Positions 3,581 through 50,250 of a stretch of DNA of 64,000 nt are shown in pieces. The position numbers and the translations under genes were made by a program. Position 1 is the first letter of the stretch. Every line of letters starts with the position of its first letter. The stretch lies in IMG/VR virus record IMGVR_UViG_3300050821_002957, positions 248,001 through 312,000 of that record; one strand, given 5' to 3'. Below the pieces are notes generated by a model. That model saw only the letters and a program-made list of their open reading frames with translations. It was not told the origin of the DNA and made no database searches.

Positions 3581-5364
3581 ATGTGGCTGGACAACTATTT
3601 ACAATTCTCGCAAAGCTCGGATTCGTTTGATTTGATCGGCTGCATACTCTTCTCGATTTTCATCCAAATAGATTGCAGCGAGCTTTCGTAATGCTTCCAT
3701 CAATACTTGCTTGGCTTCGCTAATTTCGTCTCGGCAATCACGTACCTTTTTGGAGTACTTGTCGTGAGCCGTCATTGGTGTGCTTGGTCTCATAATCCTC
3801 GTCTCCAATCCTTCACCCATTCTAACGCAATCCACTCATGCATTCTTCGATCCAGGTCGCCGTTTCCCACCATCGTGTTTCTGTACCAATGGTCTTCGGA
3901 AAAAATAAGAACTTGGTTACCTCTCGACGATCATTTGCCCTAGGCCAGGAACGTGTCGATGCTGTCCAACGCATTCCTATTCTTCTTTCTTTGCCGGGGT
4001 CAGTAACTTCATCGATGTGTTGGAACAGAGGATAGCCTTTTGTCCTTGGATCGGCTCATCAAGTAATACGATGTACGTCTTGATGATGTGATCGAGTGCT
4101 AGACCAAGTACGGTTCCGGTGCCCCTGATCTGATTCGTGATGTTGAACTGAATGTGATCATCAACATTGAACGTAACTCGAAACGCCGGGTTATCCAATG
4201 AATCTGATTTCACAGTTGGAACGACGAGCTTTTGGCCTTCTGGTGACTCGATAAAATCTTCGGCGGTGATGTTAATTATTTCCTGATTCTTCATTGTTTC
4301 CTGCTATGTACTGAATACCGTAATTCTGTCCTCGCTTTCCGAAGATCCAACGACCGGCGACCACACCCTTATAGATGTTCGCATTCATTATCATGTTGGT
4401 CATGTCTGTCATCATCATAACAGATTTCATACCTGTGGTCATCGACTCCAATTCCAAATAGGCAGCGGAACGACCTCGACCATATCCAAGAATCTTCATG
4501 GTATCATCAAACTCTGCTGGGACACGCCACTGATAGTCGTAATGTCTGATCTGCCAACCAATCCAATTGAGCCAATCCGCTTCGTCTTTCCACGTTGGTT
4601 TCCCGTCGTAACGCATCGGATTCTGAAAGCCTGCATCACGAACCGCTTTCCATTCTGCCAGTTTGGTGATACAAACTGATTGCCTATCTGCCCAATGAGG
4701 AACATCGCCCGTCTGATTGTGAAACGGAATTTGTATGGTGCTCTTCCTCTTTTTTGTCGGCATAGAACTTTCTCCAAGAATACCACAAAAATTTTGGTTG
4801 TCAAAAGAATCGGATGTGGTAGGATACGTAAAGAGGCTTCCCTTACAATATGAATTTGAGTTATGAAAATTTGATGGCAAGCTGTATCATGGCAGCAGTA
4901 GATATAGCTTTACAAGAAGCAAAGACAACCCCATTGACACCGGGCGCTCATGTCGGTCATGTGGATCTGGAGAAGTACGGCCCAAGGTGGGGAATACTTC
5001 AGACCATCACACCAACCGAAGCAACTGTCGAGATGAAAGACGGTGAAATCATGACTTGGGAAACTGAGGGAATGGTCGATATCGAACGTGTCGATTCACT
5101 CATCAAAGAAAACCAAGAAAAAGTGATGAAGGAAATCATGTTGCTTAATTCCCTGGACGAAAACAACAATGGTGTAGCATTAGAATCCAATCCAATGATG
5201 ATCGGTGGCGCTGACTTGCCGACTCCTGGTTGTGACTGTGATCACTGTGCTACGTTCACACCAGAACAACACGAACAAGCTCGGTTGGTGGCAGAACAGA
5301 TGGGGCTGGACATTGATCCGAAATCTTCGACCTATCTTCAATTGAAAGCCGCTGCTGATCTCAA

Positions 5365-36190: not shown

Positions 36191-36555
36191 AAAAAGGCCG
36201 ACAGACACTCTCTTAAGTAGAGTATCCATCGGCCCAGTTCTCTGAACGAGTCGGTAGAGTCCTTGCAAGCGTCGATTGGGATGTTCGTAGGCGCAAGGCC
36301 ATACATCTGATATCGACGGTTTTTAAACCCTACAAGATTCAGCCCGGTTGCGGTGCCGTTAGCTGATCTCTGCATCACACACTATCTCGTTAGCAGGATG
36401 TACACGTCGCTCACCATTTTTCTAATGATACGAAATCTCTACACTGTCGTGCAAAGTGCGTGTCAACCCTGGCAAACTTGAGTTGGCTTTGAACCGTCCA
36501 GACTTAGACTGGGTTCGCTTTGTCCCGGTCGCATCGTCTGTAACCTCTTGCTCAC
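36191..36555 (-). ncRNA. Candidate ~365-nt standalone ncRNA
   Basis: TTGACT-17-TAGTAT promoter at 36562..36590; 16-bp terminator hairpin plus U5 at 36191..36234; no convincing ORF. Confidence 0.55.
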
Positions 36556-37294
36556 AAACCAATACTAACAAACCTCTTAGAAGGAGTCAAGAGAAATTTA
36601 AGGTTATTTTTCTATTGACTTCTCCCAAAAAATGTGCTATTCTGAAAGATTACTCTAAAGGAGCACCCCAAATCGCAGCCGCAGAAGGGCCACCAGCTTC
36701 CATGTAACATCCGTCTTCGCCACACTTCTCGCAAGTCATGTTATCGGCGGTGAATGCACTGGTCGCAGCTTCTCGGAGCCACTTCGCCTTGTTCAGCCCG
36801 GACATGTAGTCTTCATCTTCGGGCAACGTCTCGGCGATCAGCTTCTTGCTGTCAGTGGTGATTCTGAAGTTTACGCCTTCGAGTATTCTATCACCGAACT
36901 GGTATCCATCCAACAGACAAGCGTCCACCGGCCCACAATCTGGACATACGAGTTTCATTTCCACAGCCCTCCTATCGTTCCTATGATGTCTACAAACGTG
37001 CCCACTGCACAGACAGCGACGATCCAATACATCACCGTCTTGAACGTCTGATTGCGTCCAGGAGCCTTCCAAATGATGAGGGCCAAGAACAGCGCTACAG
37101 CAATCAAAAAGTGCTTGAACACAGATTGTAGTTCGGTCATGAAAAATATTGTAGCAGATTTTTGAGGAAAGTAAAATGAGCCGTTGTGGAGTCGAACTCA
37201 GCTTGGGTATATTTGGTCCCTGCGGTGCGGTTGGCAGTCAAAGAGGATGCCTTCGGCAATTGGGGTACAATTCCATATGCAAGGAAAAAAATTT

Positions 37295-37382
37295 TGGTGG
37301 GACGGGTGTGAGTCGAACACACAGGGTTCCAAGGAACATCCGCTTTACAGGCGGCTCTCGCTCCCTACGAGACTACCATCCC
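37295..37382 (-). tRNA. tRNA-Tyr(GTA), long variable arm, extended D stem
   Basis: GGGATGG/CCGTCCC acceptor, loop CTGTAAA, TTCGACT T-loop, ACCA end. Confidence 0.9.
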
Positions 37383-38818
37383 AAGTTTGAATGATAGGGC
37401 AGGAACGGTTATACTAAAGGCTTAACAGAGTGCTACTGAAGCACGCCGCCGTTCACGCCCAAAGTATAATAATAGAGAGTCATAAAATTTGATCTGTGAC
37501 TCGTCCGGGTAACAACTTCATTCCGGCACCCAGTCACTTCAATATGTATACTAGCACTATTCTTGAGTGCTGTCAAGCTGCTATAGTGCTGGCAATCTTC
37601 TCAAGCTCAACAATGTCTGCTTCGGTAAGAGAGAAACTAAGCACACTATCAAGTAACTGCCATTCTACATCATGCTCAAACAGTGTTGTATCGATGCCCT
37701 TGAACTTCGCCAAATGACAAAGCAACTTTCGACTCATTCGCATCAATACGGCACCTTGAAGACCAAGTAACCATAGATCCAGACATGCAGGATCATGATG
37801 TATTCCCAGACAGTCGCCCACGGTTCTGGTGTGAACGACTGCATCAACAGCGTGAACAAAAGAATTTTGAAGACAGAACTTCGTATCTTATCGACCGGAG
37901 TGTTCATTCGCCGCCGTCTCCTCCATCTCCACCGTCTCCTCCGTCACCACCATCGCCATCTCCGCTGTTGTTTGATGACACAGCCGGTGCAGGATCTTCA
38001 CGCTCGACCACAACAGTTGGCGTTGTTGCTACCTGAACAACATCTTCGACGATTTCTTCAAAAACCTGAGCAGCTACAAACGGGTCCACGTAATTGGTGG
38101 TGTCATCGGCGTTATAGACGGTTGTCGAATGAGTCCGAGGCACCAAATTGATTGAGCGAGGCGTGTTGCGAATTTGCCGGGGAATGTTGTTGCCAATCTG
38201 ATTAGGCGTATTGTTGATCGGGCGAGGCGTTGTTCGCACACTCGGCCACGGAGTTGGGTTTACAGAATCACGAGGCCACGGTGTAGTTGGCTGTACTTCA
38301 CGGTCACGATGAGGGAGCGTATCCTTCAACGATAAACTACCAGTCGGATATCGCTTCTCTTTCGGAGCGTCTTCGTACAACAAACTCTTGATCGTTTTCC
38401 ACAATGACATAAAGGGTCCTTCCTTTTCTGTTTTAATTAGGCAACCAAGTGCCCATCCAACTGCCATTCAACGACTGATCGATCTTCGGCAGCAGCTTGC
38501 TCAACTTGTGGCCTGGATACGCAGCCCGAAGATCGAGTTCCTGCGTCAATCCTTTCCAAACTTCCCATTCGGTGTATTGCATAGGATTATCTTACCACAT
38601 CAATTTGTCTGGTCGTTTTCGTCGTACTCAGAGTTGACAATGCTCTGTGTTACGTTATCTGTCACTCGAATGACAATGCTTCTCCATCCTTGCCAATCGA
38701 CCATGATTTGCAGAAGCTCAAGGCCGGTGAAGCCTGAGCGATTACACGCTATTTGAAAATCTTGAATGCGTTGTCGCTTCGTCTTGGTGGTTCGTCTTCC
38801 AGCAGGCATCGTAGTCTC

Positions 38819-39055
38819 CTATTTTCTGTGGCCGATATGATAGAACGAGCACCACCGGCACTTGTAAGCATCGAATGGGTCCTTCTGTTGGTCGGCGCAT
38901 TTCTGTGCTGCTTCCATCGTAAGAAAGTCAATCTTGTTCATGCAACTTCGTACTTTGTCGTACATTGGACCAACCGGCGCAGGCTTCGGAGGCGTCTCAC
39001 AAAAAGCAATGTACATGTCCTGAGTCGTAATTTTTGGTGGTTTGTTAGAAGGCAT
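38819..39055 (-). CDS. Small zinc-binding phage protein (paralog of 20847..21125)
   Basis: C.NKI.F.T...A....Y.CRWCSFYHIGH. Confidence 0.65.
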   Translation of the reverse strand: MPSNKPPKITTQDMYIAFCETPPKPAPVGPMYDKVRSCMNKIDFLTMEAAQKCADQQKDPFDAYKCRWCSFYHIGHRK

Positions 39056-40612
39056 TTCAGTTCTCGATACGCTCTTCCCAGATTTTCAGCACTTTCATGA
39101 ACTGTTCATCGAGTTCCGGCGACTCTCCAATGGTAATTTTCCGACCCATGAGCTTACTGACTTCGGCGATACTCTGGTCCATTTTTTTGGTCGCACGCAC
39201 AATGTCGAGTTCATGTAGATGATCGAAGTTCTTGGCAGTCTTCCAGATTTCTGCTTCAGCCTTCACGTCTACAATACTACGGTTGATCCAATCGAAGATG
39301 GCCTTGTACTGACGTTTGTTGCTTCGGCGTTGAACTAGCGCCAACAACTTTTCACGATTGGTCTGAAGTTTACACAAAAGGGAGTGGAGTTCGATACGTC
39401 GAGCAGCCTTGTAAATTTGAAATTGCAACCATGTGCTCATTTCACGTCCCATCCTTTCAGGAACAAAGACAAGACTACACGTTCGAGATTTCGTAAGGCT
39501 TCGTTGGAATCGGTAGCAGGCGCAGGATCGAGTTCAATTTTGTCACTGACCACCTGGGGCACATTTGTCGTCGGAACAAATGTTTTGCAACGATTAATTG
39601 GTTGATGCCAGACGTAGGTCTTTCCCGCAATCTCGACGACGAAACGGTAGCACAGGGTATCTGTCTCAAAGACAAGATTGGAGACGAACCCATTATCGTA
39701 CAGATACCAAATGAAATTGGTTTTTAGGTCGTAGGCTTTATTGTTCGTTGCCGCCGTGAATTTTTTCGCCTTGATGTGCTTGTTCAGATCGTAGCACGCC
39801 TCACACCCGGCAGCGACGACATCTTCAAAAAGCATCCCACCGAGCGCCTCAAGTTCTCGTTCCGCCACCTTACGAAGCTCGACAACAAACTCAGGAGATT
39901 GCTTTGCAGTAGCGATAGCACTCTGCGGAAAGAATACTATGCCCGAGGCATCATTACGTTTGACCGGCGCACCCAACAGAGCGATCATGCCTTTGGTCCA
40001 GTTTTTACCCCGAAACGTATTGATATCGAGTGGATCATTAGTGCCGAAGTGATTGACAGACACCAGATAATTCGGAAACCCTTTCATGCCTTTTTCTCCT
40101 CTAAGAATACAGTGTAACCGTATCGGTACATACCAAACAATTGCCCATCTTCATCCGTACCAGTAGAGATCATGTGAAATGCTCTGTCACCCATCACAAT
40201 GATCATCGGGATATGGTCTAGCTCGACGGTACGAACTTCGTCATGCAGCCCATCACGAAGATACAGGCGCATCTGTTTTGGTTTCATGCTTTCACTCCGA
40301 AAATCTTTTTCAAAATCCAGACAGGCGGATGATCCAACCATGCAAGATCATTGGCAAATGGACATTCATCCTGGCGCAAAGAGGACTCATAATACTTGGC
40401 AGCGGCAACCGAAATGCTTGTTGATTCCACCCAACCATCACACTTTGAATACGTCATGTGAATGTATTCTAGAGCTTCTTCAGCGGTGCGGCCTCTGGTG
40501 AGCACCGTGCCAATACGGGAATGTGAGAAGCTCCACAGCAAATACTTCTCACCATTCGGAACGTACCGGAATTCAAGTTCTCGGCACTCTTCTGTTGTAA
40601 GCCACTTCATCA

Positions 40613-41710
40613 TTATTTCACCCCTGCAAATTGTTCGATCATTGCTTGCTGGGAAGGCTGACCGGCCAGCGGATTCGCCGACGAAGGCTTCACACCCTTT
40701 ACCAGCCGCACATTGTGGAACGTCGTCGGATACTGATTGAAGCCTTTTCCGTGGACACTGTAGTTGCAGATCACTTTGTTGCGAACAGTGAAGCTCGATC
40801 CATCGGCGAAGTGAAACACAATCTCGCCCTGAAAGCCTGCGCCATTCACATGACCCTCGATGATTTCGGGAATGACACCGGAACCGAAACCGCTCATGAT
40901 CATCTGATTGTCTTTCGCTTCAAGAACGACGGCCAGCTTGGTGACGTTTTTGTAGAGGAACATACGCTGGGCATAATCGGCGTCCTTCTGAGCGATCTTG
41001 CGGAGCAGATCCTTGAAATTTGGAACGAGGCGAGTATAGTTGCCGGTGTGCGAATCCCATCCTTCGCCTACAGTCTGTAACAAGAAATCGGCAGAGGTCG
41101 GCGTATATCGTTCGTTGCGTGTGCGAGGATGGTCCATGCGATATTGAACCGAAGAGACGAAATTGTTGAACAGGATGTCTTCGTACTGGAGGGTCAGACC
41201 GTCTGTCATGTCCTTCAGAACTTTCGTGACGAGGATTGCCGCTTCGGTGGTCGGCATCGGCGGAACGTAATCGTCGGCCTTCTCTTCTTCGCTGCGCCCG
41301 ACACGCTTCACAATTTTGTCCTTCAGGAGCATCAGCGCATCATACAGGTCAACGATCTCAGCGCAGACGGCGAACCATTGAGCATTGTCAAACTTCTTCT
41401 TTTTGGCGAGCTTCACTTTTCCGGCGACTTGATTGCCGTACATGAAAGTCAGATCGAAGGTATAGTTCTCGACCTTGGGAAAATGATAGGCAGCGCTAAA
41501 GGCTTCGCTGTACAGTCCACGATGGCTGTCCTCTGCGATACTGACGACGGTATTGAGTGCTTCTTTGGCGCTCTTGAATTCAGGATTGGGGATCGAATCG
41601 GTGTAGGTGTTCAGAGCATTGACGACCGTCTGGAGGGCTTTCTTGCCCCAAGACGATTGATTCGCTTGGCAGGCGGCGTTCAACAGCGGGTATTGATCTA
41701 CGCTCTTCAT
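40613..41710 (-). CDS. Early hypothetical phage protein
   Basis: 365-aa ORF with its own leaderless promoter and palindrome; no function recognised. Confidence 0.6.
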   Translation of the reverse strand: MKSVDQYPLLNAACQANQSSWGKKALQTVVNALNTYTDSIPNPEFKSAKEALNTVVSIAEDSHRGLYSEAFSAAYHFPKVENYTFDLTFMYGNQVAGKVKLAKKKKFDNAQWFAVCAEIVDLYDALMLLKDKIVKRVGRSEEEKADDYVPPMPTTEAAILVTKVLKDMTDGLTLQYEDILFNNFVSSVQYRMDHPRTRNERYTPTSADFLLQTVGEGWDSHTGNYTRLVPNFKDLLRKIAQKDADYAQRMFLYKNVTKLAVVLEAKDNQMIMSGFGSGVIPEIIEGHVNGAGFQGEIVFHFADGSSFTVRNKVICNYSVHGKGFNQYPTTFHNVRLVKGVKPSSANPLAGQPSQQAMIEQFAGVK

Positions 41711-41876
41711 GAAACTAGAATAGCAAACCTACCCTACCATGTCAACAGTAGATGCATCTTTTTCTGGAAGGAATATTTTATCTACCTCTTGACATATTGA
41801 CGGCTGGTGCGCTATGCTGGTACTGTCAAAGAGAGTCCCATTTTCAACGACTTACGTCCGTTGATAAATACTCTCC

Positions 41877-42281
41877 ATGAAAACCTTCCTCGAATTTATC
41901 TTGACCGAGAATGCCATGTTACCGGGCGTTGCTGGCGTAATGAAACACCAACGGGACAATGGTTTAGCCAAGGTAGGTGTTCATCCCAATTTTGCTGCCA
42001 TTAAGAAGCAGCGTGAAGATAGCATCAACAAAGTTGGCACCCATCCAAATTTTGCTGAAATCTTACGTCGGCGTCAAGCAGGTCAAATGTCGGAAGAAGA
42101 AATGAACGAACTGCTTGGTCTATTCAAAAAGAAAAACGATGCAAAACCCTCGCCGTTTGCCAAACCAAAAAACGCAATTGGACATGGTGACAAGGCTTAT
42201 CGCACGAACCACCATTATGGGAACGGTGACATCGAACCATCCACCGTTCCTATTTTCAAACCAACTTGGCAGAATCGTTAG
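41877..42281 (+). CDS. Probable internal head protein
   Basis: N-term MKTFLEFILTE resembles the T4 capsid targeting sequence MKTYQEFIAE; TAAATA promoter; internal repeat KVG.HPNFA.I. Confidence 0.65.
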   Translation: MKTFLEFILTENAMLPGVAGVMKHQRDNGLAKVGVHPNFAAIKKQREDSINKVGTHPNFAEILRRRQAGQMSEEEMNELLGLFKKKNDAKPSPFAKPKNAIGHGDKAYRTNHHYGNGDIEPSTVPIFKPTWQNR

Positions 42282-42865
42282 AAACGTCTCGGACACGCTG
42301 GCGGCTTCGCACAATCACCGGGTCCACCATTGTCCTTGGTCACTTTTTTGTTGGGAACTTTCTTCGGCTTTTTGACCGGCGACAATTGATGTGCATCGAA
42401 GTATTGAACGTCAGTCAAAATGCCTTCATGCAGTTTTGATGATTGCAGACCGACTCGCTGTGACGACGTAAAAAATTTGGACAATGAAATCGCAACACCT
42501 TCAAAATCTGAAATGCTGTCTTTGTACGTGTCGCCGAGTACGATCATATCCGGCTCTTCTTCATATGAAATCACTGCGGCCCCAGGTTGTTCTTGGAGAA
42601 GCTGTTCGTCAATGTAGAATCCGTCCATCGGCCCACCGTCAGCCTTGAGACCCGGAGGCTGAATTGCCACTCGGACGCACGCATACAGGAAAGTTGTGCG
42701 AGAGACAGCGACACCTTTAAGTCCTGAAATGGGATCTTTGTATGTTCTGCCGAGCGTTGCTACTTCTGTCGCTGCGGTCTTCAAAACGTTTTCACGATCA
42801 ATTGGTTTGGAGTTTGCCATGTGTCGAGAGTAACATGATGGCTATAGGTGTGTCAATAATTTTAA

Positions 42866-42953
42866 TGGCTGGAGGAGCAGGACTCGAACCTGCATATGAG
42901 CTTTCGCTACGACACATTAACAGTGTGCTGCCTTACCGTTAGGCGACCCTCCA
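42866..42953 (-). tRNA. tRNA with GTT (Asn) anticodon on a class II long-variable-arm body
   Basis: TGGAGGG/TCCTCCA acceptor, G73-CCA, loop CTGTTAA, 18-nt variable region with AGC-GAAA-GCT hairpin. Confidence 0.88.
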
Positions 42954-42967
42954 ATATAAATGGATGT

Positions 42968-43408
42968 ATGGCAAATTCACAGAAAGTAAAAGAATGGCGC
43001 AAAAGAACCAAACAACGAATGATTGATGCAATGGGTGGATCGTGTGTAGTCTGTGGCTACACTCGTTGTTCAGCCTCATTAGGATTTCATCATCTCGATC
43101 CGAGCAAGAAACATTTTGGTTTCGGAGGTCTTCGTGCCAACCCAAAATCTTGGGAGAAGATCAGCGAAGAACTACGAAAATGCGTTCTGATTTGCAATCG
43201 TTGTCACGGAGAAGTACATGATGGTATAACCATCATTCCCATTAATGCAAAACGGTACGACGAAAGTTATGCTCAGAAATTTGGAAGAAGAAAAATGGCT
43301 CCGGGGACAGGACTCGAACCTGTAACATCCGCTTTAACAGAGCGGCGCTCTACCATTGAGCTACCCCGGAATGAGGTTGCTTCTTTGGTTAGGGTCACGC
43401 CGTTTTAA
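42968..43408 (+). mobile_element. HNH endonuclease between two tRNA-Asn genes
   Basis: CVVCGY..C..SLGFHHLDP..K...E..KCVLICNRCHGEVH. Confidence 0.85.
43296..43370 (-). tRNA. tRNA-Asn(GTT), canonical
   Basis: TCCGGGG/CCCCGGA, CCGCT-CTGTTAA-AGCGG, GCCA end. Confidence 0.95.
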
Positions 43409-43711
43409 AGCGTGACCTACGTATTGTAGGTTGTGTAAGTCATCACAATTCTATTTATACCACGGTGTTTTGAAACTGTCAACCTTTTATTTTACATTGA
43501 CTCCGATCATTCGTCATACCGATCCATGAATTCTCTAACGTCATCAATACGAATTACAAACAAAATGATGAACAGAGGACCGCCGATGCAAAATAACACT
43601 CTGGCAGTTTGCTCCATGTCCATTATCATCTCAAAGAACCCCGCAAGAAAAAGCAAAATGAATGCCAGCCGCCAGCAATTCTTCCAGTTGATCTTCACAT
43701 AATCGAACATG

Positions 43712-44647
43712 TTACACCACCAAATCTTTGGGCAAGCGTTCAGTCCGTGCAATCTCTTCTGCGGTCGGTTTGATCACATTGCCGACGATTCCACCGAAGA
43801 TTGCTCCGACCGTATCTGTGTCGCCACCGACCTCAATGAAGCTGTTGATGCAGGATGCGAACGAAAGACCTTTTTCCAAAGCCTGATGTGCCTGCCATAA
43901 TGCAAAAGGAACTGTATCGACTGCCGTTACTTCTTTGCCGTTTCCAACCTTGCCAATTATTCCCCAATTGGTTTCGTTAAATGCACCCTCACTGGCGACC
44001 CATTCGATGCGATCACGAAGTTCCCCTGATGGTGTGTATTTGATGATGTTTAACCAGAAGTCTTCCTCAGGTCTTCCATAAGTTACGTTTGCTGCGGCTA
44101 TGGCGACCGCTATCGAACCGGCAATAGCATCGACGTGATAATGGGTCACTTCGGCAGATAGACGTGCTTCTTGCGCTACAAGGCCATAGTCAGGTCCAAA
44201 GTGTGCGCCAATGACAGCATCACGCATTGCCGATCCGTTGCCTTTTGAGCCGATGCCCGGTCCCCACCAATTCTTGCTATGCTCAAGCCAATTGTCGGAG
44301 TCATAGCTATAGGTCGTCAACAAACCACGAGTGCCACGCCCATAACCACGCTGAGGATCAACATGAAAATTACGAGCTAATTCCTGAGCGAGTTCGAGTT
44401 GATTGATCGTATTGAATCGGTACAAAGTTCTAACGACACCAATACCGACATGTGTGTCGTCTGTCCAGGGATAGAGAATGTCAATTTTTGTGATCCCTCG
44501 TTCAGTGGCGACATTCCCAGCCTTGTAATATTCAGCCGGAAGAATCTTCATCTGATTTTCGCCTGCTGCATCGCCTACCGACAAGGCAAGAAGCGAAAGA
44601 TAAGTTTCTTTCTTTTTGTACTGCATCGGAGCAAGACAGGGTGTCAT
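43712..44647 (-). CDS. ADP-ribosylglycohydrolase family protein
   Basis: VGDAAG, WTDDT, RGYG, GNGSAMR, VTH, GGDTDT. Confidence 0.92.
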   Translation of the reverse strand: MTPCLAPMQYKKKETYLSLLALSVGDAAGENQMKILPAEYYKAGNVATERGITKIDILYPWTDDTHVGIGVVRTLYRFNTINQLELAQELARNFHVDPQRGYGRGTRGLLTTYSYDSDNWLEHSKNWWGPGIGSKGNGSAMRDAVIGAHFGPDYGLVAQEARLSAEVTHYHVDAIAGSIAVAIAAANVTYGRPEEDFWLNIIKYTPSGELRDRIEWVASEGAFNETNWGIIGKVGNGKEVTAVDTVPFALWQAHQALEKGLSFASCINSFIEVGGDTDTVGAIFGGIVGNVIKPTAEEIARTERLPKDLVV

Positions 44648-45292
44648 ATTTCACCTACTTGGTCGGTTTGTGCCAACCATATGCATGTTGAGCGGTCTTT
44701 GGCTCATATCCTAGAACGAGGTTACAGTTGGCAATACATTCGTCAAGATGACCGTCGCCTTTGTGAGTTGGATCTTGCAAAAATTGAAGTGCATGACGAA
44801 TTGCTTGGCGTGCAGATCGAGCTTCGTTTTGCAGACGTTGAATTTGTTCTTCTATAGTTTCTACCATGTCTTAGTGTTTGTCCTCCACCACCCAAACAGA
44901 TAGCATACCACGGCGTAGATAATTGTCCATTCACCAGCAGTGAGAAAGAATGTGCCGCATCCTATCGTAGGAGTATCGAATGACAAGTTTGCAAAGAAGG
45001 CTTTTCCAAGACAAACAGCGAGACCGCCAAAATAAACAGCGGCAAAGAAGAGTTCACTTGGTCGAGGTACGGTGATATTGGGCCACTTCATATCCACAAT
45101 GTTCGCACCGATCACCAGGGAAGTCAAGTTTTGCGCCTTGATGTAGATGAGCTTCTTGATTTGGATTGTCGGGCGTGCAGATAGTTTCAATGCCGGTAAA
45201 CTTTGTGTTTGGATCGAAACTGAAATTTGGATCTAATTTGTAAATCATAGCAAGAAGTATATAGCACTTCTAAGCCAATGAAATTAAGGTTT

Positions 45293-45366
45293 TGGCAGGA
45301 GTGGTAGGAGTTGAACCCACGCTAAAGGTTTTGGAGGCCCTTGTGCTACCGTTACACCACACTCCT
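45293..45366 (-). tRNA. tRNA-Trp(CCA)
   Basis: AGGAGTG/CACTCCT acceptor, loop CTCCAAA, GCCA end. Confidence 0.92.
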
Positions 45367-45382
45367 GTGATGAGGAAGATTA

Positions 45383-45458
45383 TGGCCGCTGGTTCCAGTT
45401 ACGCTCTGGACTCTTCTGTTCTTCAGACAGACGCTTTCACTAGATTAGCTTACCAGCG
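45383..45458 (-). tRNA. tRNA-Phe(GAA), atypical T-loop AGCGTAA and D-loop AG
   Basis: CGCTGGT/ACCAGCG acceptor, TCTGT-CTGAAGA-ACAGA anticodon arm, TCCAG/CTGGA T stem, GCCA end. Confidence 0.85.
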
Positions 45459-45476
45459 GTGTTGTGCTTTGAGAGA

Positions 45477-45515
45477 GGCGCAACGACTGCTGGTTTCAAC
45501 AGCAGTCGTTGCGCC
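45477..45515 (-). other. Perfect 16-bp hairpin with 7-nt UUGAAAC loop, 5' of tRNA-Phe
   Basis: GGCGCAACGACTGCTG inverted repeat. Confidence 0.8.
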
Positions 45516-45605
45516 CCGGTGGTAAATCGCCAATATGTAAAAGTGCGTGTCATCGTAATTCTATTTATACCACGATCATTGCTGTCTGTCAACAATGAAA
45601 TTCTG

Positions 45606-45684
45606 TGTCGTGAACAAATGGTTCCTCGGATGGGAGCGGTATCATAGGCAGTGATAATCCCACCTGATTCCCCGGCTCACGACA
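45606..45684 (-). ncRNA. Y-RNA-like RNA 1 (bulged-C terminal helix)
   Basis: UGUCGUGAGC-C-GGG...GGGAUUAUC...AUUUGUUCACGACA. Confidence 0.7.
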
Positions 45685-45990
45685 AAATAACAAGGCCACT
45701 CGGAAGTAGCCAAGATCCCTTGGTACACATGGTAACAGGGTCTACTATTCGTGAATGATTTCGCCTATCACTCGTTCTGGCATTAGCTTCTCAGGCGGGA
45801 CACTTCCATTCATAAGGTCAACCATGCGCTGTGCTTGAGCTAGAGTGTGAAAGGTTCCATACGGTGTGACATGTGCTCCACCGTCGCCAGAACCTACTTC
45901 AACCAAATCATACTTCGTTTCCGTCTTCGGCCAAATCTCGTACCTAATTTTCTGTTCGGTCGATGACTTGTTGACGAATTCCATAAATGT

Positions 45991-46521
45991 GTGTCGGTGT
46001 TAAGGCACACCGAGCAGGCCGCAAGATTTTGTTACTGATCAATACCTGCTAAGAACCAGGATGTTTAAGAACTTATCCTTGAGAAAGCTCCGTTGTAGGC
46101 GACACGGCTTCCCTGAGAGTCAGAGTTACTTCAGCTACTCCTGATGGTATGGTGACTCAGCTACCCCGACTTTTTAGTGATCGGCTCCATTCCGGTATTC
46201 GATTCGGCAACGACAGATTCCGACTCTGCAACGTTCTGCTTCTTTTCGATGAGAAGCAAAAATCATAAAAACTCAAAATGACCAGAGGACCCTCAGCAGT
46301 GAGCGCAGATCCCACGTTCGCATACAAGCGTCAATGACAAGTTTTATCCAACGAGCCATTGTCTTGTACGTTGGCTCACCGTCGAGTGCGCTATCCAGTT
46401 CGACACACTCACCTGCGGTTCTAATGACTTTCGTCTCCCGCTGGCCCTATCATCGCCTCACACTTCCGTGTGTTTCAACATCCTGGTCATCTCAAGGGCG
46501 ACAGCCTTGCGGCCACGACAC
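45991..46521 (-). ncRNA. Large pseudoknotted ncRNA, ROOL-like (~530 nt)
   Basis: Long-range pairs 45991-96:46516-21, 46017-25:46506-14, 46055-65:46477-87 and 46077-84:46490-97 (last two cross); lies in a tRNA cluster; family name is an inference. Confidence 0.65.
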
Positions 46522-46768
46522 CCCACCAGCTTTTTTACTGTGTACTGATCACAGGGAGAGCTAGAACGACTTTCGCCGCCCCACACCTACCGCCACTGGT
46601 CGAGACTTCTACATGCGACCAGCCATGTCGCTAAAAGGGGCACTACGAGTAGATGCCCTCCACCACGTTGTTCTTTTACGTCCAACAACGAAACGACTTA
46701 GACCCATAACTCTGACCGGAAATCAGAACTATGATCCACACTCCCCGGTGGAAGCCGGGAAGACTTTG

Positions 46769-46855
46769 AATGTGAACTAATAATTGACAAGGGATTATAG
46801 CCCCGAAGGACCATTTCACCATTTGAAAGATAACCCTCATCTTCCGGCTCACATC
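46769..46855 (-). ncRNA. Y-RNA-like RNA 2
   Basis: GAUGUGAGC-C-GGAAGAUGAGGGUUAUCUUUC...AUUAGUUCACAUU. Confidence 0.68.
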
Positions 46856-46864
46856 ACGAAATAC

Positions 46865-46963
46865 GGCTGCTTGTCCTACCATTAGACGACCGGATCTGCC
46901 GACGCTTTACGCCATGAGAGCAGATTGGACTCCGACCGGGACTCGAACCCGGATTTCTCAGCT
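46865..46963 (-). ncRNA. Circularly permuted tRNA-like module (YrlA-type T-acceptor-D order) 1
   Basis: CCGGG-UUCGAGU-CCCGG, then UCGGAGUCCA, linker hairpin, UCCGG-UC-GUCUAAUGGUAGGAC; closed by GCUG/CAGC. Confidence 0.8.
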
Positions 46964-46971
46964 AGACGAAT

Positions 46972-46996
46972 GACGGAGCATAGTGCGCTCTACGTC
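46972..46996 (-). repeat. Conserved bulged hairpin, copy 1 of 3 (others 58131..58157, 58628..58654)
   Basis: (GA)ACG-UM-GAGCG-CASUR-UGCUC-CGU. Confidence 0.8.
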
Positions 46997-47001
46997 GGAA
47001 T

Positions 47002-47078
47002 TGGTGGATACACATGGGAATTGAACCCATAACCTTCTCGGTGCAAGCGAGTTGCTCTCCCAATTGAGCTAGTGACCC
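47002..47078 (-). tRNA. tRNA-Ala(TGC) with a 1-nt bulge in the acceptor stem
   Basis: GGGTCAC / GTG-T-ATCC, G3.U70, loop CTTGCAC, ACCA. Confidence 0.9.
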
Positions 47079-47085
47079 ATAACTT

Positions 47086-47162
47086 TGTACCTCGAACAAA
47101 TAAGTATCAGAGGGCTTGTCATTAGGAAAGATAACCCTCTAAATCCGGCTCGAAGCACTACA
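47086..47162 (-). ncRNA. Y-RNA-like RNA 3
   Basis: GCUUCGAGC-C-GGAUUUAGAGGGUUAUCUUUC...AUUUGUUCGAGGU. Confidence 0.72.
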
Positions 47163-47169
47163 AAACTTT

Positions 47170-47248
47170 TGGTGGATCGCCAGGGATTTGAACCCTGCTG
47201 TTATCCTCGGTGCAAGCGAGGCAAACACCCCAAGCATTTCCGCAACCC
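47170..47248 (-). tRNA. tRNA-Ala(TGC), non-canonical 6-bp D stem
   Basis: GGGTTGC/GCGATCC with G3.U70; AAATGC-TTGGG-GTGTTT D arm; CCTCG-CTTGCAC-CGAGG. Confidence 0.85.
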
Positions 47249-47256
47249 ACATTTAA

Positions 47257-47466
47257 ATAGCACGAACAAATAGCGGTAGAAGACTGATAGGAGACTGCAT
47301 TTAACGCACCCTCGGATTGGATACCGATCAGATACGCTTCAAACTCCCCTCCTCAAAGTTACGGGCGTCTTTTACTACACGTACAACGAACTGCTTTGTG
47401 CCCACCAAATACTGCCGGTGAACTTTGTCATGGTTAGGTAACCTTCCAACCAGCGGCTCGTGCTAT
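47257..47466 (-). ncRNA. Y-RNA-like RNA 4 (long internal domain)
   Basis: AUAGCACGAGC-C-GC...GAAGGUUACC...AUUUGUUCGUGCUAU. Confidence 0.7.
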
Positions 47467-47468
47467 GT

Positions 47469-47530
47469 CGAAACAGAACGAAACAGAACGAAACAGAACG
47501 AAACAGTGCTCAACGATGCGAAACAGTGCG
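47469..47530. repeat. 10-bp tandem repeat CGAAACAGAA x3 plus two CGAAACAGTG variants
   Basis: Read directly from sequence. Confidence 0.9.
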
Positions 47531-48220
47531 TTAGGTCAAAGATCGTATTCTTTATCTATACACGCTACAGTTTGCTTTCAATAGCGCCTTTGACTCTTTC
47601 AGTCTAACATCCTTAGTATGGGATGTCAAGTGCCACGAACATAATAATTTCATCTTCGTCTTTTTTGCGACGAGCAGCAGCTTCTTTCTCAGTCAACACC
47701 AGAGGAGACGGATTGCCTTCGACTTTGATATTCACTGATAAACCTTGCTGGAGCCATCCAGATACTTCATCGGGCGGCGTCTCGACAAATGCCTGATCAC
47801 ACGCCTTCTGAATTTCGACATTGCGTATTGCAGCAAGCGGTTTGCCGGATGGCGTCATGATGTCTACGTTACAAAGAAGCATGTTTATCTACCAACTGCT
47901 ACGGCTGAAATTCCGATAACACTTTCAATATTGTACAACAGACGAGCGGCTTCTGACAATTCTGAGCCGGTGCGATCCAGTGTAGCATGGACGCCGGTCG
48001 GATCAGAATCAGCTTTTGAGTCATCGTCTTCTCCGGTGTATTGAAGAACATCTAACACCGTTTTTAAGCGACGAGCCAACATCCTAGCCAATTGCAAATT
48101 TGCATCCGAAGAAGATTGAATTGTCGTTGGTTCGTGGTTCTTTTCTGCTGGACCGTCAACAACTAATCCAAACTTCTCTAATAAAACTTTGTTTCCTTTC
48201 TTTCCTGTATTCATAATTTT

Positions 48221-48296
48221 TGGTTGGCCCAGATGGAATCGAACCATCAACCTCAGAATTATCAGTTCTGCGCTCTACCAATTGAGCTATGGGCCA
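48221..48296 (-). tRNA. tRNA-Ile(GAT)
   Basis: TGGCCCA/TGGGCCA, CAGAA-CTGATAA-TTCTG, ACCA. Confidence 0.95.
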
Positions 48297-48381
48297 ACAT
48301 ACTCAGAAGTAGTTATACTAGCGGCGAATCATTAGTGGAGGCCCAATAATCCGCCGCCAGTTTTACAGAATCAACCAAAAA

Positions 48382-50175
48382 CTACTCTTCGGTCTCTTCT
48401 GCGATCCCAGCACTTGAACCACGAATAAAATCCGTAACCAATGCTGGAACATTCGAGTCGAACCCAACGATGTCCAAAGAATACGGGTCCTTCGGATCTG
48501 CGATGGTAAATTGCGTAGAAACCATTCCCATCACGATCAGGCGCACATCATCCTGCCCACGATGCTTACGATACTGCTTGAGAGCCTGCGACGGTTGCAT
48601 TTGTCCAGCCCAAGTCTCATTATCCGTGATCACCATGAAAGCGTCTGCGTCGATGCCAGCCTTTTGAGCGTGAAGCATCGGTGCAGCACAATCGGTTCCA
48701 CCAGCCGACATGCGAGAGGTCTTTGCCAACGCAGTCTTCAGAGTGTCCTTTGCGGTGATGCCAATTTCCTGCATTCCCGTAGAAAATGCATAGATAGCGT
48801 AATTCGGTTCCGTGCGAGCCACAACCATCGCCATTGCTGCGCCTGCTTGTGCTGCCGTGATTCCGGTGCCTTGGATGATGCTGGACGCCCACGACATAGA
48901 ACCAGAAACGTCCATGCCAATGTACGTAGCCTTACCAGTCGGAATTGCGTTTGCGAATGCCAAGTAGAACGTGTTCTCTAAAGCGTCCACAATGGTCGGT
49001 ACAACGGTCCAGGTCGCATCGCTGCGCTGACCGTGGCCTTGGCCGTAGGTGCCTTGTGCCAACAATACCTGGAGCGGGTGAATCTTGCTCTTCTTGACGT
49101 AGGCTTCATCGTTCAAACGAGACACGACGAGCTTCGATGCTGCCGACAGCGGCTTCAAGAGACCAATCTTCGACATGGTTCCAAGATTACGAACCATTGC
49201 AGTTACCGGCATCTTCTGAAGCAGAGCTTCCCAGACTTCCGGTTGCGTCTTAAACTGCGTCGGAATCATTTCGTGAGTCAATCCACCGTCGATGATGCAC
49301 TTTACGATAGTGCTCGTATCCGTCGCCTTCTTTGCGGTTTCATAGGCGGTGATCAACTTCGGTGCGTTCGATCCGGTCAACAAATCATAAGCGTTCTGAT
49401 AGCGAGCACGCTGATTCTGAATTTCCGCAGAAGTCAGATCAGTCGTGCGATGGCTGTTGCCCTGCCACTTCTTGACAGAACGAGTCCAGTTCTGAGCAGC
49501 TTCGTTCAAGGCATCGAGACCACCGAAACGACCCCAAGCCAGCAAAGCACTCTTCATCGGATCAGTCGCCTTGACGTGTGCGAGGCTGACGAGATCACGA
49601 GTGGACCAGCCATCACGCTGTTGATACTTCGCCAACTGATAAGCCAGCGAATCTTCCGTGCGTTCGGTGTACCAGTTGCCGATTGCAGTCTTTACACCAC
49701 GACCGTATCCACGCATGGAATCGAGGTACTCGTTGAAGTGGAACATGTGAGTACCGATACGTGCAACCTTGCTCAATTGCGACAGAGCATAAGCAGCAGT
49801 TTCAGCCGAACCAAAATTCGGTGTTGCGGCAACTGCCAGGGCAAACAATGCCGGATCGTTCTTCGGAGCACGGCCTGCTTGCGAAATGTTGACGATCATA
49901 TCGACCGTGCGCTTTCCATCCAACTGCAAGCACGCACGAACGTTCGCTGCGTTGTCTACAGTCATCTTCTTGGCAGATGCATAGTACGTCGGCGCATCGC
50001 TACCGAGAATCAAAAATCGTTCGAGCATCTGGAAGGGAGTGATGGTGAAGGTGTATCCACCAGCGTTGTTCTGCTTCATCTCTGCTTCCCGGCCCGGAAT
50101 TGCCTGCGACTGTGATGTCTTCTTGCCGCTTAATACCGTTGCGTAATTGCTCTTTGCTGATCCTGCCTTTGCCAT
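48382..50175 (-). CDS. rsr: Ro60/Rsr TROVE-domain RNA-binding protein
   Basis: NNAGGY, RFLILGS, GRAPKNDPALFALA, KYQQRDGWS, RNLG.M, IHP, vWA DVSGSM, TDNETW, GFD; AGGAGA SD before ATG 50175. Confidence 0.95.
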   Translation of the reverse strand: MAKAGSAKSNYATVLSGKKTSQSQAIPGREAEMKQNNAGGYTFTITPFQMLERFLILGSDAPTYYASAKKMTVDNAANVRACLQLDGKRTVDMIVNISQAGRAPKNDPALFALAVAATPNFGSAETAAYALSQLSKVARIGTHMFHFNEYLDSMRGYGRGVKTAIGNWYTERTEDSLAYQLAKYQQRDGWSTRDLVSLAHVKATDPMKSALLAWGRFGGLDALNEAAQNWTRSVKKWQGNSHRTTDLTSAEIQNQRARYQNAYDLLTGSNAPKLITAYETAKKATDTSTIVKCIIDGGLTHEMIPTQFKTQPEVWEALLQKMPVTAMVRNLGTMSKIGLLKPLSAASKLVVSRLNDEAYVKKSKIHPLQVLLAQGTYGQGHGQRSDATWTVVPTIVDALENTFYLAFANAIPTGKATYIGMDVSGSMSWASSIIQGTGITAAQAGAAMAMVVARTEPNYAIYAFSTGMQEIGITAKDTLKTALAKTSRMSAGGTDCAAPMLHAQKAGIDADAFMVITDNETWAGQMQPSQALKQYRKHRGQDDVRLIVMGMVSTQFTIADPKDPYSLDIVGFDSNVPALVTDFIRGSSAGIAEETEE

Positions 50176-50250
50176 ATCATTATCTCCTATGATACCTAAT
50201 TTTTTCGACTTCACCAGAATAACACATGCCTGATTGTTGTCAAGCATGTA

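What the first reader, a model, noticed from the sequence alone, without database searches (positions are those of the whole stretch)
42866..42953. Asn-anticodon tRNA on a Ser-like long-variable-arm body
Bacterial tRNA-Asn has a short variable loop. This one has an 18-nt arm and G73, features read by SerRS, which ignores the anticodon; GUU is one change from Ser GCU. It also has U1-A72, typical of tRNA-Asn. It is either a recruited, possibly nuclease-resistant tRNA-Asn or an Asn-to-Ser mistranslator. A canonical tRNA-Asn lies ~340 bp away.
Basis: partly seen in the sequence, partly recalled or inferred. Interest (0 to 1): 0.68.

Follow-up and report, generated by a model that had tools for sequence, protein, structure and literature searches.

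The report
Phage asparagine tRNA with extra arm
A 405-kb soil phage carries a second asparagine tRNA gene with an extra hairpin arm; it looks like a true asparagine tRNA rather than a disguised serine tRNA, and it is one of a common but apparently undescribed class of long-armed phage tRNAs.

Summary
Window 42866-42953 (- strand) encodes an 88-nt tRNA with anticodon GUU, U1-A72, G73, an encoded CCA and an 18-nt variable region that forms an AGC-GAAA-GCU hairpin. A canonical 75-nt tRNA-Asn lies 342 nt away.

The "Ser-like body" reading is not supported:
- The D arm is class I (4-bp stem, 7-nt loop).
- The acceptor pair is U1-A72, not the G1-C72 of bacterial tRNA-Ser.
- The arm stem has 3 bp, against 4-7 bp in phage tRNA-Ser.
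- With the arm removed, its closest relative in the genome is the neighbouring tRNA-Asn.

It is not a one-off. Their acceptor ends match short tRNA-Asn, not tRNA-Ser. In complete 20-isotype tRNA arrays the long-armed form is the only tRNA-Asn.

A close relative (L354) keeps the arm almost unchanged while all the other variable stems covary.

Best reading: a working tRNA-Asn charged by host enzymes. What the arm does is not known. It may protect the tRNA from nucleases, or it may be linked to the homing endonucleases found beside these genes. Some Ser mischarging is not excluded. I found no paper describing this class.

The parts
42866..42953 (-). 88-nt tRNA with anticodon GUU and a long variable arm (the target). 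U1 is at 42953, A72 at 42870, G73 at 42869, and the encoded CCA at 42866-42868.
   Evidence: ARAGORN; Rfam RF00005 at 54.1 bits; cloverleaf minimum-energy fold; covariation with relatives.
42919..42921 (-). Anticodon GUU, inside the loop CUGUUAA.
   Evidence: Read directly from the sequence; ARAGORN.
42894..42911 (-). 18-nt variable region, CGU-AGC-GAAA-GCU-CAUAU.
   Evidence: ARAGORN bracket output. Nearly identical in L354 and the same layout in L014.
42899..42908 (-). Variable-arm hairpin: a 3-bp stem AGC/GCU closed by a GAAA tetraloop.
   Evidence: Fold. All 3 stem pairs change on both sides among relatives. GNRA loops occur in 52 of 105 such arms.
43296..43370 (-). Canonical 75-nt tRNA-Asn(GUU) with a 5-nt variable loop, U1-A72 and G73. 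It is the closest relative of the target's body in this genome.
   Evidence: 73.8 bits; 70% identity once the variable region is removed.
42971..43408 (+). HNH homing-endonuclease ORF (145 aa) lying between the two tRNA-Asn genes. It starts 18 nt from the target and its 3' end runs antisense through the canonical copy.
   Evidence: PHROG phrog_35854, HNH endonuclease, E 3e-27. It belongs to the HNH cluster that is enriched in long-arm loci.

Best explanation
The target is a functional phage tRNA-Asn whose variable loop has grown into a short hairpin arm. It keeps the full bacterial asparagine identity set: anticodon GUU, discriminator G73, and the U1-A72 pair used by GatCAB. The phage has no synthetase of the relevant classes, so the tRNA is most likely charged with Asn by the host AsnRS, or by ND-AspRS followed by GatCAB, and it reads AAC and AAU as Asn alongside the canonical copy. 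This is inferred, not shown.

The arm is an add-on that EF-Tu and the ribosome accept, as they do for class II tRNAs. Its sequence is under purifying selection.

The purpose of the arm is not shown. I consider three options:
(a) It changes the shape of the tRNA so that host nucleases that target tRNAs, or other host factors, no longer recognise it. The phage would then hold two structurally different tRNA-Asn.
(b) It travels with, or protects the gene from, the homing endonucleases that live in phage tRNA clusters and cut tRNA genes.
(c) It is a tolerated, stabilising insertion.

I rank (a) and (b) slightly above (c).
For: - Identity elements are all present. Asn identity is the anticodon plus G73 and can be transplanted into tRNA-Lys. 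GatCAB requires U1-A72 (PMC9976931).
- With the arm removed, the body is closest to the phage's own canonical tRNA-Asn (alignment score 24, all other tRNAs 15 or less, tRNA-Ser 13).
- Among 96 phage long-armed GUU tRNAs, 63 are U1-A72-G73 and 26 are G1-C72-G73. Short GUU tRNAs show the same split (18 and 8 of 32). None of 60 phage tRNA-Ser has U1-A72.
- The first three acceptor pairs also follow short tRNA-Asn. The Ser-type GGA/UCC occurs in 2 of 105 long-armed GUU tRNAs and in 49 of 74 tRNA-Ser.
- A body classifier that ignores the anticodon and the arm assigns 84 of 105 to Gln or Asn and 3 to Ser. For the target, Asn beats Ser by 7 nats.
- In arrays that cover all 20 isotypes (L228, L078, L196, L104) the long-armed GUU tRNA is the only tRNA-Asn, and a separate Ser(GCU) is present. 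Of 42 dense arrays, 29 have no short copy.
- L354 has almost the same arm and D arm but a canonical UCC/GGA acceptor stem, with compensated changes in the other stems.
- The phage has no class IIb synthetase, no SerRS-type catalytic domain and no GatB.
- Asn codons make up 5.2% of the codons in long ORFs, so Ser insertion would be costly.
- For option (a): PARIS AriB cleaves tRNA-Asn(GUU), and phage tRNA variants rescue infection (PMC12409363).
- For option (b): HNH and GIY-YIG ORFs are enriched in long-arm loci, and long-armed tRNAs lie closer to them. T4 SegB cuts tRNA genes, and its best site is in a tRNA-Asn gene (PMC2330249).
Against: - No charging or expression data exist. Contigs from an RNA library cover the canonical copy and the HNH ORF but not the target. 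Contigs cannot show absence.
- G73 together with a long arm are the main SerRS determinants, so partial serylation is possible.
- AsnRS and AspRS approach the tRNA from the variable-loop side (my own knowledge), so an arm could hinder them.
- The classifier places the target nearer Gln than Asn (UGG/CCA acceptor, U8-C9, G10).
- For the arm's role: the host is unknown, so evasion of a nuclease cannot be tested. The endonuclease association is modest (p about 0.01) and may only reflect position within the array. SegB's site starts at the T arm, not the variable loop.
Confidence: 0.72

Rival explanations
1. Asn-to-Ser mistranslator, or a dual-identity tRNA. The host SerRS, which ignores the anticodon, reads the long arm and G73 and loads Ser, so AAC and AAU are partly decoded as Ser.
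For: The tRNA has a long variable arm, G73, G2-C71 and C11-G24. The size of the arm and G73 are the main Ser determinants (PMC9976931). Class II tRNAs with foreign anticodons are mischarged in nematodes (nev-tRNAs, PMC3333845) and in bacteria (allo-tRNAs, PMC5389517).
Against: It has U1-A72 where bacterial tRNA-Ser conserve G1-C72, and none of 60 phage tRNA-Ser has U1-A72. The D arm is class I, with no room for the 20a/20b residues that orient the Ser arm. The arm stem has 3 bp, against 4-7 bp in phage tRNA-Ser. The family fills the only Asn slot in complete arrays. Asn codons are 5.2% of codons. Long-armed forms of other isotypes appear, on reading the sequences, to keep their own acceptor marks (not counted).
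Confidence: 0.1
2. Not a translation tRNA. It could be a decoy or sponge for tRNA-targeting toxins, a processing signal within the tRNA transcript, or a decaying duplicate.
For: A canonical tRNA-Asn is already present. No RNA contig covers the target. A Ro60-like RNA quality-control gene sits in the same cluster.
Against: Every universal tRNA residue, every stem and the CCA are intact. Relatives show compensated stem changes, an invariant anticodon loop and an invariant G73. The family is the only tRNA-Asn in many arrays.
Confidence: 0.1
3. Glutamine mischarging. The acceptor stem and D arm carry the E. coli GlnRS set (U1-A72, G2-C71, G3-C70, G73, G10), so GlnRS might load Gln.
For: The classifier places the body nearest tRNA-Gln. 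The Gln identity set is listed in PMC9976931. Amber derivatives of tRNA-Asn became Gln inserters (same review).
Against: GlnRS needs G36 and U38 and prefers U or C at position 34. The target has G34, U36 and A38. The close relative L354 has the Asn-type UCC/GGA acceptor stem.
Confidence: 0.03

Closest known systems
Canonical bacterial and phage tRNA-Asn(GUU)
   Same: Anticodon loop CUGUUAA, G73, U1-A72, a 4-bp D stem with a 7-nt loop, and a T arm nearly identical to the copy 342 nt away.
   Different: The variable region is an 18-nt hairpin instead of 5 nt, and the acceptor stem is UGG/CCA rather than the usual UCC/GGA.
Bacterial class II tRNA-Ser
   Same: A long variable arm, G73 and G2-C71.
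   Different: U1-A72 instead of G1-C72, a class I D arm, a 3-bp arm stem against 4-7 bp, and an anticodon that is not a Ser anticodon.
Nematode nev-tRNAs and bacterial allo-tRNAs (class II bodies carrying foreign anticodons; PMC3333845, PMC5389517)
   Same: A long variable arm combined with an anticodon of a class I isotype.
   Different: Those tRNAs keep a Leu, Ser or Sec-type body and are charged according to that body. Allo-tRNAs have an 8/4 or 9/3 acceptor/T structure. The target is 7/5 and keeps the acceptor identity that matches its own anticodon.
Phage tRNAs that escape defence nucleases (T5 tRNA-Lys, tRNA-Thr and tRNA-Asn against PARIS AriB; PMC12409363, PMC10264068)
   Same: An extra phage copy of a tRNA that is a known nuclease target, differing from the standard form.
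   Different: The known escapes rest on point changes in the anticodon stem-loop or D loop. A whole added arm has not been described, and resistance is untested here.
tRNA genes in phage clusters that are targets of homing endonucleases (T4 SegB; PMC2330249)
   Same: A homing-endonuclease gene sits directly beside a tRNA-Asn gene within a tRNA cluster.
   Different: This one is an HNH enzyme, not GIY-YIG. Neither its target site nor any effect of the arm on cleavage is known.

Membership tests
tRNA (Rfam RF00005) | Cloverleaf structure and conserved residues scoring above the gathering score | tested here: met
   54.1 bits against a cut-off of 29; ARAGORN; cloverleaf minimum-energy fold.
Bacterial tRNA-Asn | Anticodon G34 U35 U36 | tested here: met
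   GUU at 42919-42921.
Bacterial tRNA-Asn | Discriminator G73 | tested here: met
   G at 42869.
Bacterial tRNA-Asn | U1-A72, the GatCAB determinant typical of bacterial tRNA-Asn | tested here: met
   U at 42953 and A at 42870. Present in 63 of 96 long-armed and 18 of 32 short phage GUU tRNAs.
Bacterial tRNA-Asn | Short (4-5 nt) variable loop, class I | tested here: not met
   The variable region is 18 nt and contains a hairpin.
Bacterial tRNA-Asn | Charged with Asn, directly or through Asp-tRNA-Asn | not testable with these tools
   This needs aminoacylation assays.
Bacterial tRNA-Ser (class II) | Long variable arm of Ser-like size | tested here: inconclusive
   An arm is present but its stem has 3 bp. 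Phage tRNA-Ser stems are mostly 4-7 bp.
Bacterial tRNA-Ser (class II) | G1-C72 and G2-C71 in the acceptor stem | tested here: not met
   The target has U1-A72. G2-C71 is present. The requirement is taken from PMC9976931.
Bacterial tRNA-Ser (class II) | Class II D arm (3-bp stem, 9-11-nt loop) | tested here: not met
   The target has a 4-bp stem and a 7-nt loop. In Ser, a 3-bp stem is seen in 42 of 60.
Allo-tRNA and (8/4) tRNAs | 8/4 or 9/3 acceptor/T-stem structure | tested here: not met
   The target is 7/5.
Nuclease-evading phage tRNA | Resists a host tRNA nuclease that cleaves the host counterpart | not testable with these tools
   The host and its defence systems are unknown. The sequence after the anticodon is UAAUGU, against UAAUCC in E. 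coli tRNA-Asn as quoted in PMC12409363.

The most novel reading that the evidence does not exclude
Long variable arms on tRNAs of class I isotypes (Asn, Thr, Ile-UAU, Met and others) are a widespread, selected trait of phages and mobile tRNA arrays, and have not been described. The arm would work either as RNA-level armour against tRNA-targeting immune nucleases, or as a DNA-level insertion that protects tRNA genes from, or spreads them with, homing endonucleases. The tRNAs would stay correctly charged either way. The target would be a typical member.
Probability: 0.35. Interest if true: 0.75.

Novelty: new variant of a known kind. Interest (0 to 1): 0.6.

Why it matters
Textbooks limit long variable arms in bacteria to tRNA-Leu, tRNA-Ser, tRNA-Tyr and tRNA-Sec. 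This tRNA-Asn, and many other phage tRNAs, carry such an arm while keeping their own identity marks. If they are charged correctly, AsnRS and several other synthetases tolerate an extra arm. That is useful for designing tagged or orthogonal tRNAs. It also raises the question of what drives phages to add the arm. The class can be tested directly in a cultured system: Brevundimonas phage vB_BpoS-Domovoi has an 84-nt tRNA-Asn.

Tried and rejected
- Close relatives of the phage were sought through two neighbouring proteins. None was found, so no syntenic comparison was possible.
- BLAST of the target against 50,697 deposited phage genomes gave only partial T-arm matches.
- Reads: the phage occurs in two soil DNA samples. 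One soil RNA library has exact contigs over the HNH ORF, the canonical tRNA-Asn and the tRNA-Trp region, but none over the target. Contigs cannot show absence or transcription, so expression stays open.
- Seven literature searches and eleven papers read gave no description of long-armed tRNA-Asn in phages or in tRNA arrays.
- An Rfam search at relaxed threshold around the Ro60 gene found no Y RNA.
- A search for proteins enriched next to long-arm loci gave only homing endonucleases. No modification enzyme, ligase or synthetase emerged.
- Origin by anticodon mutation of this phage's own tRNA-Ser(GCU) or tRNA-Tyr(GUA) was rejected for the target on body similarity. Some other long-armed GUU tRNAs do have Tyr-like or Ser-like D arms.
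- Not used: the large protein searches, structure prediction, and any genetic code other than table 11.

Full report
**Setting.** The window is bases 248001-312000 of a 405,631-bp IMG/VR virus record that CheckV rates as complete. The genome has 46% G+C. ARAGORN finds 44 tRNA genes covering 19 isotypes, plus a tmRNA. Rfam adds a Phe-like tRNA at window 45386-45458. Of the 44 tRNAs, 39 encode their CCA end, and six anticodons occur twice, GUU among them. The DNA is present in two soil metagenomes.

ARAGORN and Rfam both call a tRNA at 42866-42953 on the - strand (54.1 bits, E 7e-9).
- The sequence gives a 7-bp acceptor stem with U1-A72, then U8 C9.
- The D stem has 4 bp and its loop is AACGGUA (7 nt).
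- The anticodon stem has 5 bp and its loop is CUGUUAA.
- The variable region is 18 nt, CGU-AGC-GAAA-GCU-CAUAU.
- The T arm is standard, followed by G73 and CCA.
- The minimum-energy fold is this cloverleaf plus the extra hairpin.
- The canonical 75-nt tRNA-Asn is at 43296-43370, 342 nt away.
- An HNH homing-endonuclease ORF on the + strand (42971-43408; PHROG E 3e-27) lies between the two. It starts 18 nt from the target and runs antisense through the canonical copy.

**The body is not Ser-like.**
- With the variable region removed, the closest tRNA in the genome is the neighbouring tRNA-Asn. It shows 70% identity and an alignment score of 24, against 15 or less for every other tRNA and 13 for the best tRNA-Ser.
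- The phage's own four tRNA-Ser have short (1-3 bp) D stems, D loops of 7-9 nt or more, arm stems of 3-6 bp, and G1-C72 or A1-U72.
- The target has a class I D arm and U1-A72.
- Bacterial tRNA-Ser conserve G1-C72 and G2-C71, and SerRS reads the size and orientation of the arm (PMC9976931).
- G73 does not separate the two readings. Asn identity in bacteria is the anticodon plus G73 and can be transplanted into tRNA-Lys. GatCAB uses U1-A72 (same review).

**The target belongs to a large class.**
ARAGORN finds GUU tRNAs of 80-94 nt in nearly all of these loci, and many come from contigs of 300-480 kb.
- A scan that accepts any gap length returned 119 loci, 11 of which hold a long-armed form. That is about 9% of phage contigs carrying this type of tRNA-Asn.
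- The same pattern across 185,579 prokaryote genomes gave mostly non-tRNA matches. The 12-14 true long-armed GUU tRNAs almost all lie in stretches with 10-36 tRNAs per 8 kb. These are mobile tRNA arrays or phage-like regions, for example in Verrucosispora, Mycobacterium and a Thermoguttaceae MAG.
- A cultured phage, Brevundimonas phage vB_BpoS-Domovoi (ON529855.1), has an annotated 84-nt tRNA-Asn as well as 87-nt tRNA-Cys and tRNA-Met.
- Rfam confirms several of these long-armed tRNAs at 55-61 bits.

**What the class shows about identity.**
- Among 96 phage long-armed GUU tRNAs, 63 have U1-A72-G73, 26 have G1-C72-G73 and 6 have G1-C72-U73.
- The 32 short GUU tRNAs in the same loci split 18, 8 and 4.
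- None of 60 phage tRNA-Ser has U1-A72, and 45 have G1-C72-G73.
- The first three acceptor pairs tell the same story. UCC/GGA and UGG/CCA are the top types in both long and short GUU tRNAs. The Ser-type GGA/UCC is found in 2 of 105 long GUU tRNAs and in 49 of 74 tRNA-Ser.
- A naive-Bayes classifier that ignores the anticodon and the variable region (leave-one-out accuracy 73%) assigns 50 of the long GUU tRNAs to Gln, 34 to Asn and 3 to Ser. Gln and Asn share U1-A72 and G73. For the target, Asn beats Ser by 7 nats, and Gln ranks first.
- Arm stems are mostly 3-4 bp in long GUU tRNAs and 4-7 bp in tRNA-Ser.
- In dense arrays that cover all 20 isotypes (L228, L078, L196, L104), the long-armed GUU tRNA is the only tRNA-Asn, and a separate tRNA-Ser(GCU) is present. 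Of 42 dense arrays with a long form, 29 have no short form in the locus. A set built to supply every amino acid would not place a mistranslator in the Asn slot.

**The arm is a selected structure.**
- The variable regions of 105 distinct long GUU tRNAs fold with a mean of -3.1 kcal/mol, against -0.8 for shuffled versions. Of these, 52 close with a GNRA tetraloop.
- A pattern built on the target's D arm found close relatives.
- L354 has the variable region CGUAGCGCAAGCUCAUAU, which differs by one base that keeps the GNRA loop, and the same D arm. Its acceptor stem is the canonical Asn type (UCCGGGA), and its anticodon and T stems differ from the target with full compensation.
- L014, from a 330-kb phage, has the same layout with a covarying stem: CGU-GAC-GCAA-GUC-CAAUC.
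- L356 (481 kb) and L357 (267 kb) carry a short and a long tRNA-Asn in tandem. Their arms are identical and their stems show compensated changes.
- On the eight-sequence alignment A2, 98.4% of cells pair and 17 of 24 pairs change on both sides. All three arm pairs covary. No shuffle and no slid register comes close.
- A broader 39-sequence alignment shows compensatory changes in 17 of 20 cloverleaf pairs.

**Long arms are not limited to Asn.**
- In the loci chosen for a long GUU tRNA, other class I isotypes also have long forms: Ile-UAU 12 of 26, Thr-UGU 13 of 46 and Met-CAU 11 of 69. Cys, His, Trp, Lys and Glu do so at lower rates.
- Reading the sequences, these forms appear to keep their own acceptor marks, for example G-1 in His and C1-G72 with A73 in Pro. 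I did not count this.
- In loci with only short GUU tRNAs the rate is 19 of 679, or 2.8%. The trait therefore clusters in certain phages.
- These phages also carry more tRNAs, with a median of 9 per locus against 4.
- This genome has one more example: a 93-nt tRNA(UAU) with a 23-nt arm, at genome position 3664-3756.

**How it most likely works.**
- Shown: an intact, conserved tRNA gene carrying the full Asn identity set and a conserved extra hairpin.
- Inferred: it is charged with Asn by host enzymes and decodes AAC and AAU. The phage has no class IIb synthetase, no SerRS-type catalytic domain and no GatB.
- Asn codons are 5.2% of the codons in long ORFs, so substituting Ser would be costly.

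**The role of the arm is open. I considered two leads.**

[quoted passage not shown] An added arm could alter recognition. The host here is unknown, so this is untested.

*Lead 2, homing endonucleases.*
- The only ORF families enriched in long-arm loci are HNH endonucleases (45 of 120 loci against 14 of 107, p 3e-5) and GIY-YIG endonucleases (17 against 5). The window's HNH ORF belongs to the first family.
- With GUU tRNAs set aside, long-armed class I tRNAs lie within 100 nt of such an ORF in 23% of cases, against 9.4% for short ones (Fisher p 0.007; within-locus permutation p 0.012).
- T4 SegB cuts tRNA genes, and its preferred site is in a tRNA-Asn gene (PMC2330249).
- The arm could therefore disrupt a target site, or simply hitch-hike with the endonuclease.
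- Against this, the SegB site starts at the T arm rather than the variable loop, and the association is modest.
- A neutral, tolerated insertion is also possible. However, the conservation of the arm in L354, L356 and L357 argues for some constraint.

**Comparison with known systems.**
- The nearest described cases are nematode nev-tRNAs (class II bodies with Gly or Ile anticodons, charged with Leu; PMC3333845) and bacterial allo-tRNAs (8/4 or 9/3, Ser-like; PMC5389517). The target differs from both. It is 7/5 and its acceptor identity matches its anticodon.
- Escape from nucleases by phage tRNAs is known only through point changes (PMC10264068, PMC12409363).
- I found no paper describing long-armed tRNA-Asn in phages or tRNA arrays, including the tRNA-array papers. 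The library does not cover all journals, so "undescribed" is provisional.

**Limits.**
- The pattern fixes the anticodon loop and the T-loop motif.
- The classifier's Asn training set is small (39).
- Expression and charging were not observable.

Noticed in passing
window 48382-50247 (-): A 621-aa ORF with TROVE and Ro60-type vWA domains (Pfam E 3e-40 and 2e-57), that is a Ro60/Rsr-like RNA quality-control protein, sits inside the tRNA cluster. No Y RNA was found by Rfam at relaxed threshold in 36500-48500.
   Followed up: partly
window 45386-45458 (-): A tRNA seen only by Rfam (39.7 bits), with anticodon GAA and an unusual T loop. ARAGORN misses it. It would be the phage's tRNA-Phe and would complete a 20-isotype set. 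Alternatively it could be a tRNA-like element linked to the Ro60 gene.
   Followed up: partly
window 37295-37382 (-): ARAGORN calls an 88-nt tRNA-Tyr(GUA). It does not reach the RF00005 gathering score and matches the tRNA-Sec model only weakly (29.8 bits), so it is a non-standard class II tRNA.
   Followed up: no
window 47170-47248 (-): ARAGORN calls a second, 79-nt tRNA-Ala(UGC) beside the one at 47006-47078. Rfam does not support it at gathering threshold.
   Followed up: no
window 43712-44647 (-): A 311-aa ADP-ribosylglycohydrolase (PF03747, E 7e-36) lies directly upstream of the tRNA-Asn pair.
   Followed up: no
G000:C1:3664-3756 (outside the window): A 93-nt tRNA with anticodon UAU, A73 and a 23-nt variable arm whose loop reads AGAUGAG. 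Similar arms with a YAGAUNAG-like loop recur in 12 of 26 UAU tRNAs of the phage loci. This parallels the nematode nev-tRNA-Ile(UAU), which is charged with Leu.
   Followed up: partly
G000:C1:120107-120198 (outside the window): The tRNA-Ser(UGA) folds with an 8-bp acceptor stem and a 4-bp T stem. This is the (8/4) tRNA-Ser type reported in phages and proteobacteria by Mukai et al. (PMC5389517).
   Followed up: partly
G000:C1:183192-183533 (outside the window): The phage encodes a tmRNA with tag peptide ANAPAFAFAAAA.
   Followed up: no
L078:4448-4744 and L003:2590-2867: Bacterial class A RNase P RNA genes (149 and 143 bits) lie inside phage tRNA arrays that also hold long-armed tRNA-Asn.
   Followed up: no
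L242 (ON529855.1, 217195-229250): Brevundimonas phage Domovoi has 87-nt tRNA-Cys and tRNA-Met with long arms, near an annotated RNA ligase 2 gene.
   Followed up: partly
window 42970-43415 and 44912-45500: A soil metatranscriptome library holds exact contigs over the HNH ORF, the canonical tRNA-Asn and the tRNA-Trp region. This may indicate transcription, or it may be DNA carry-over.
   Followed up: partly
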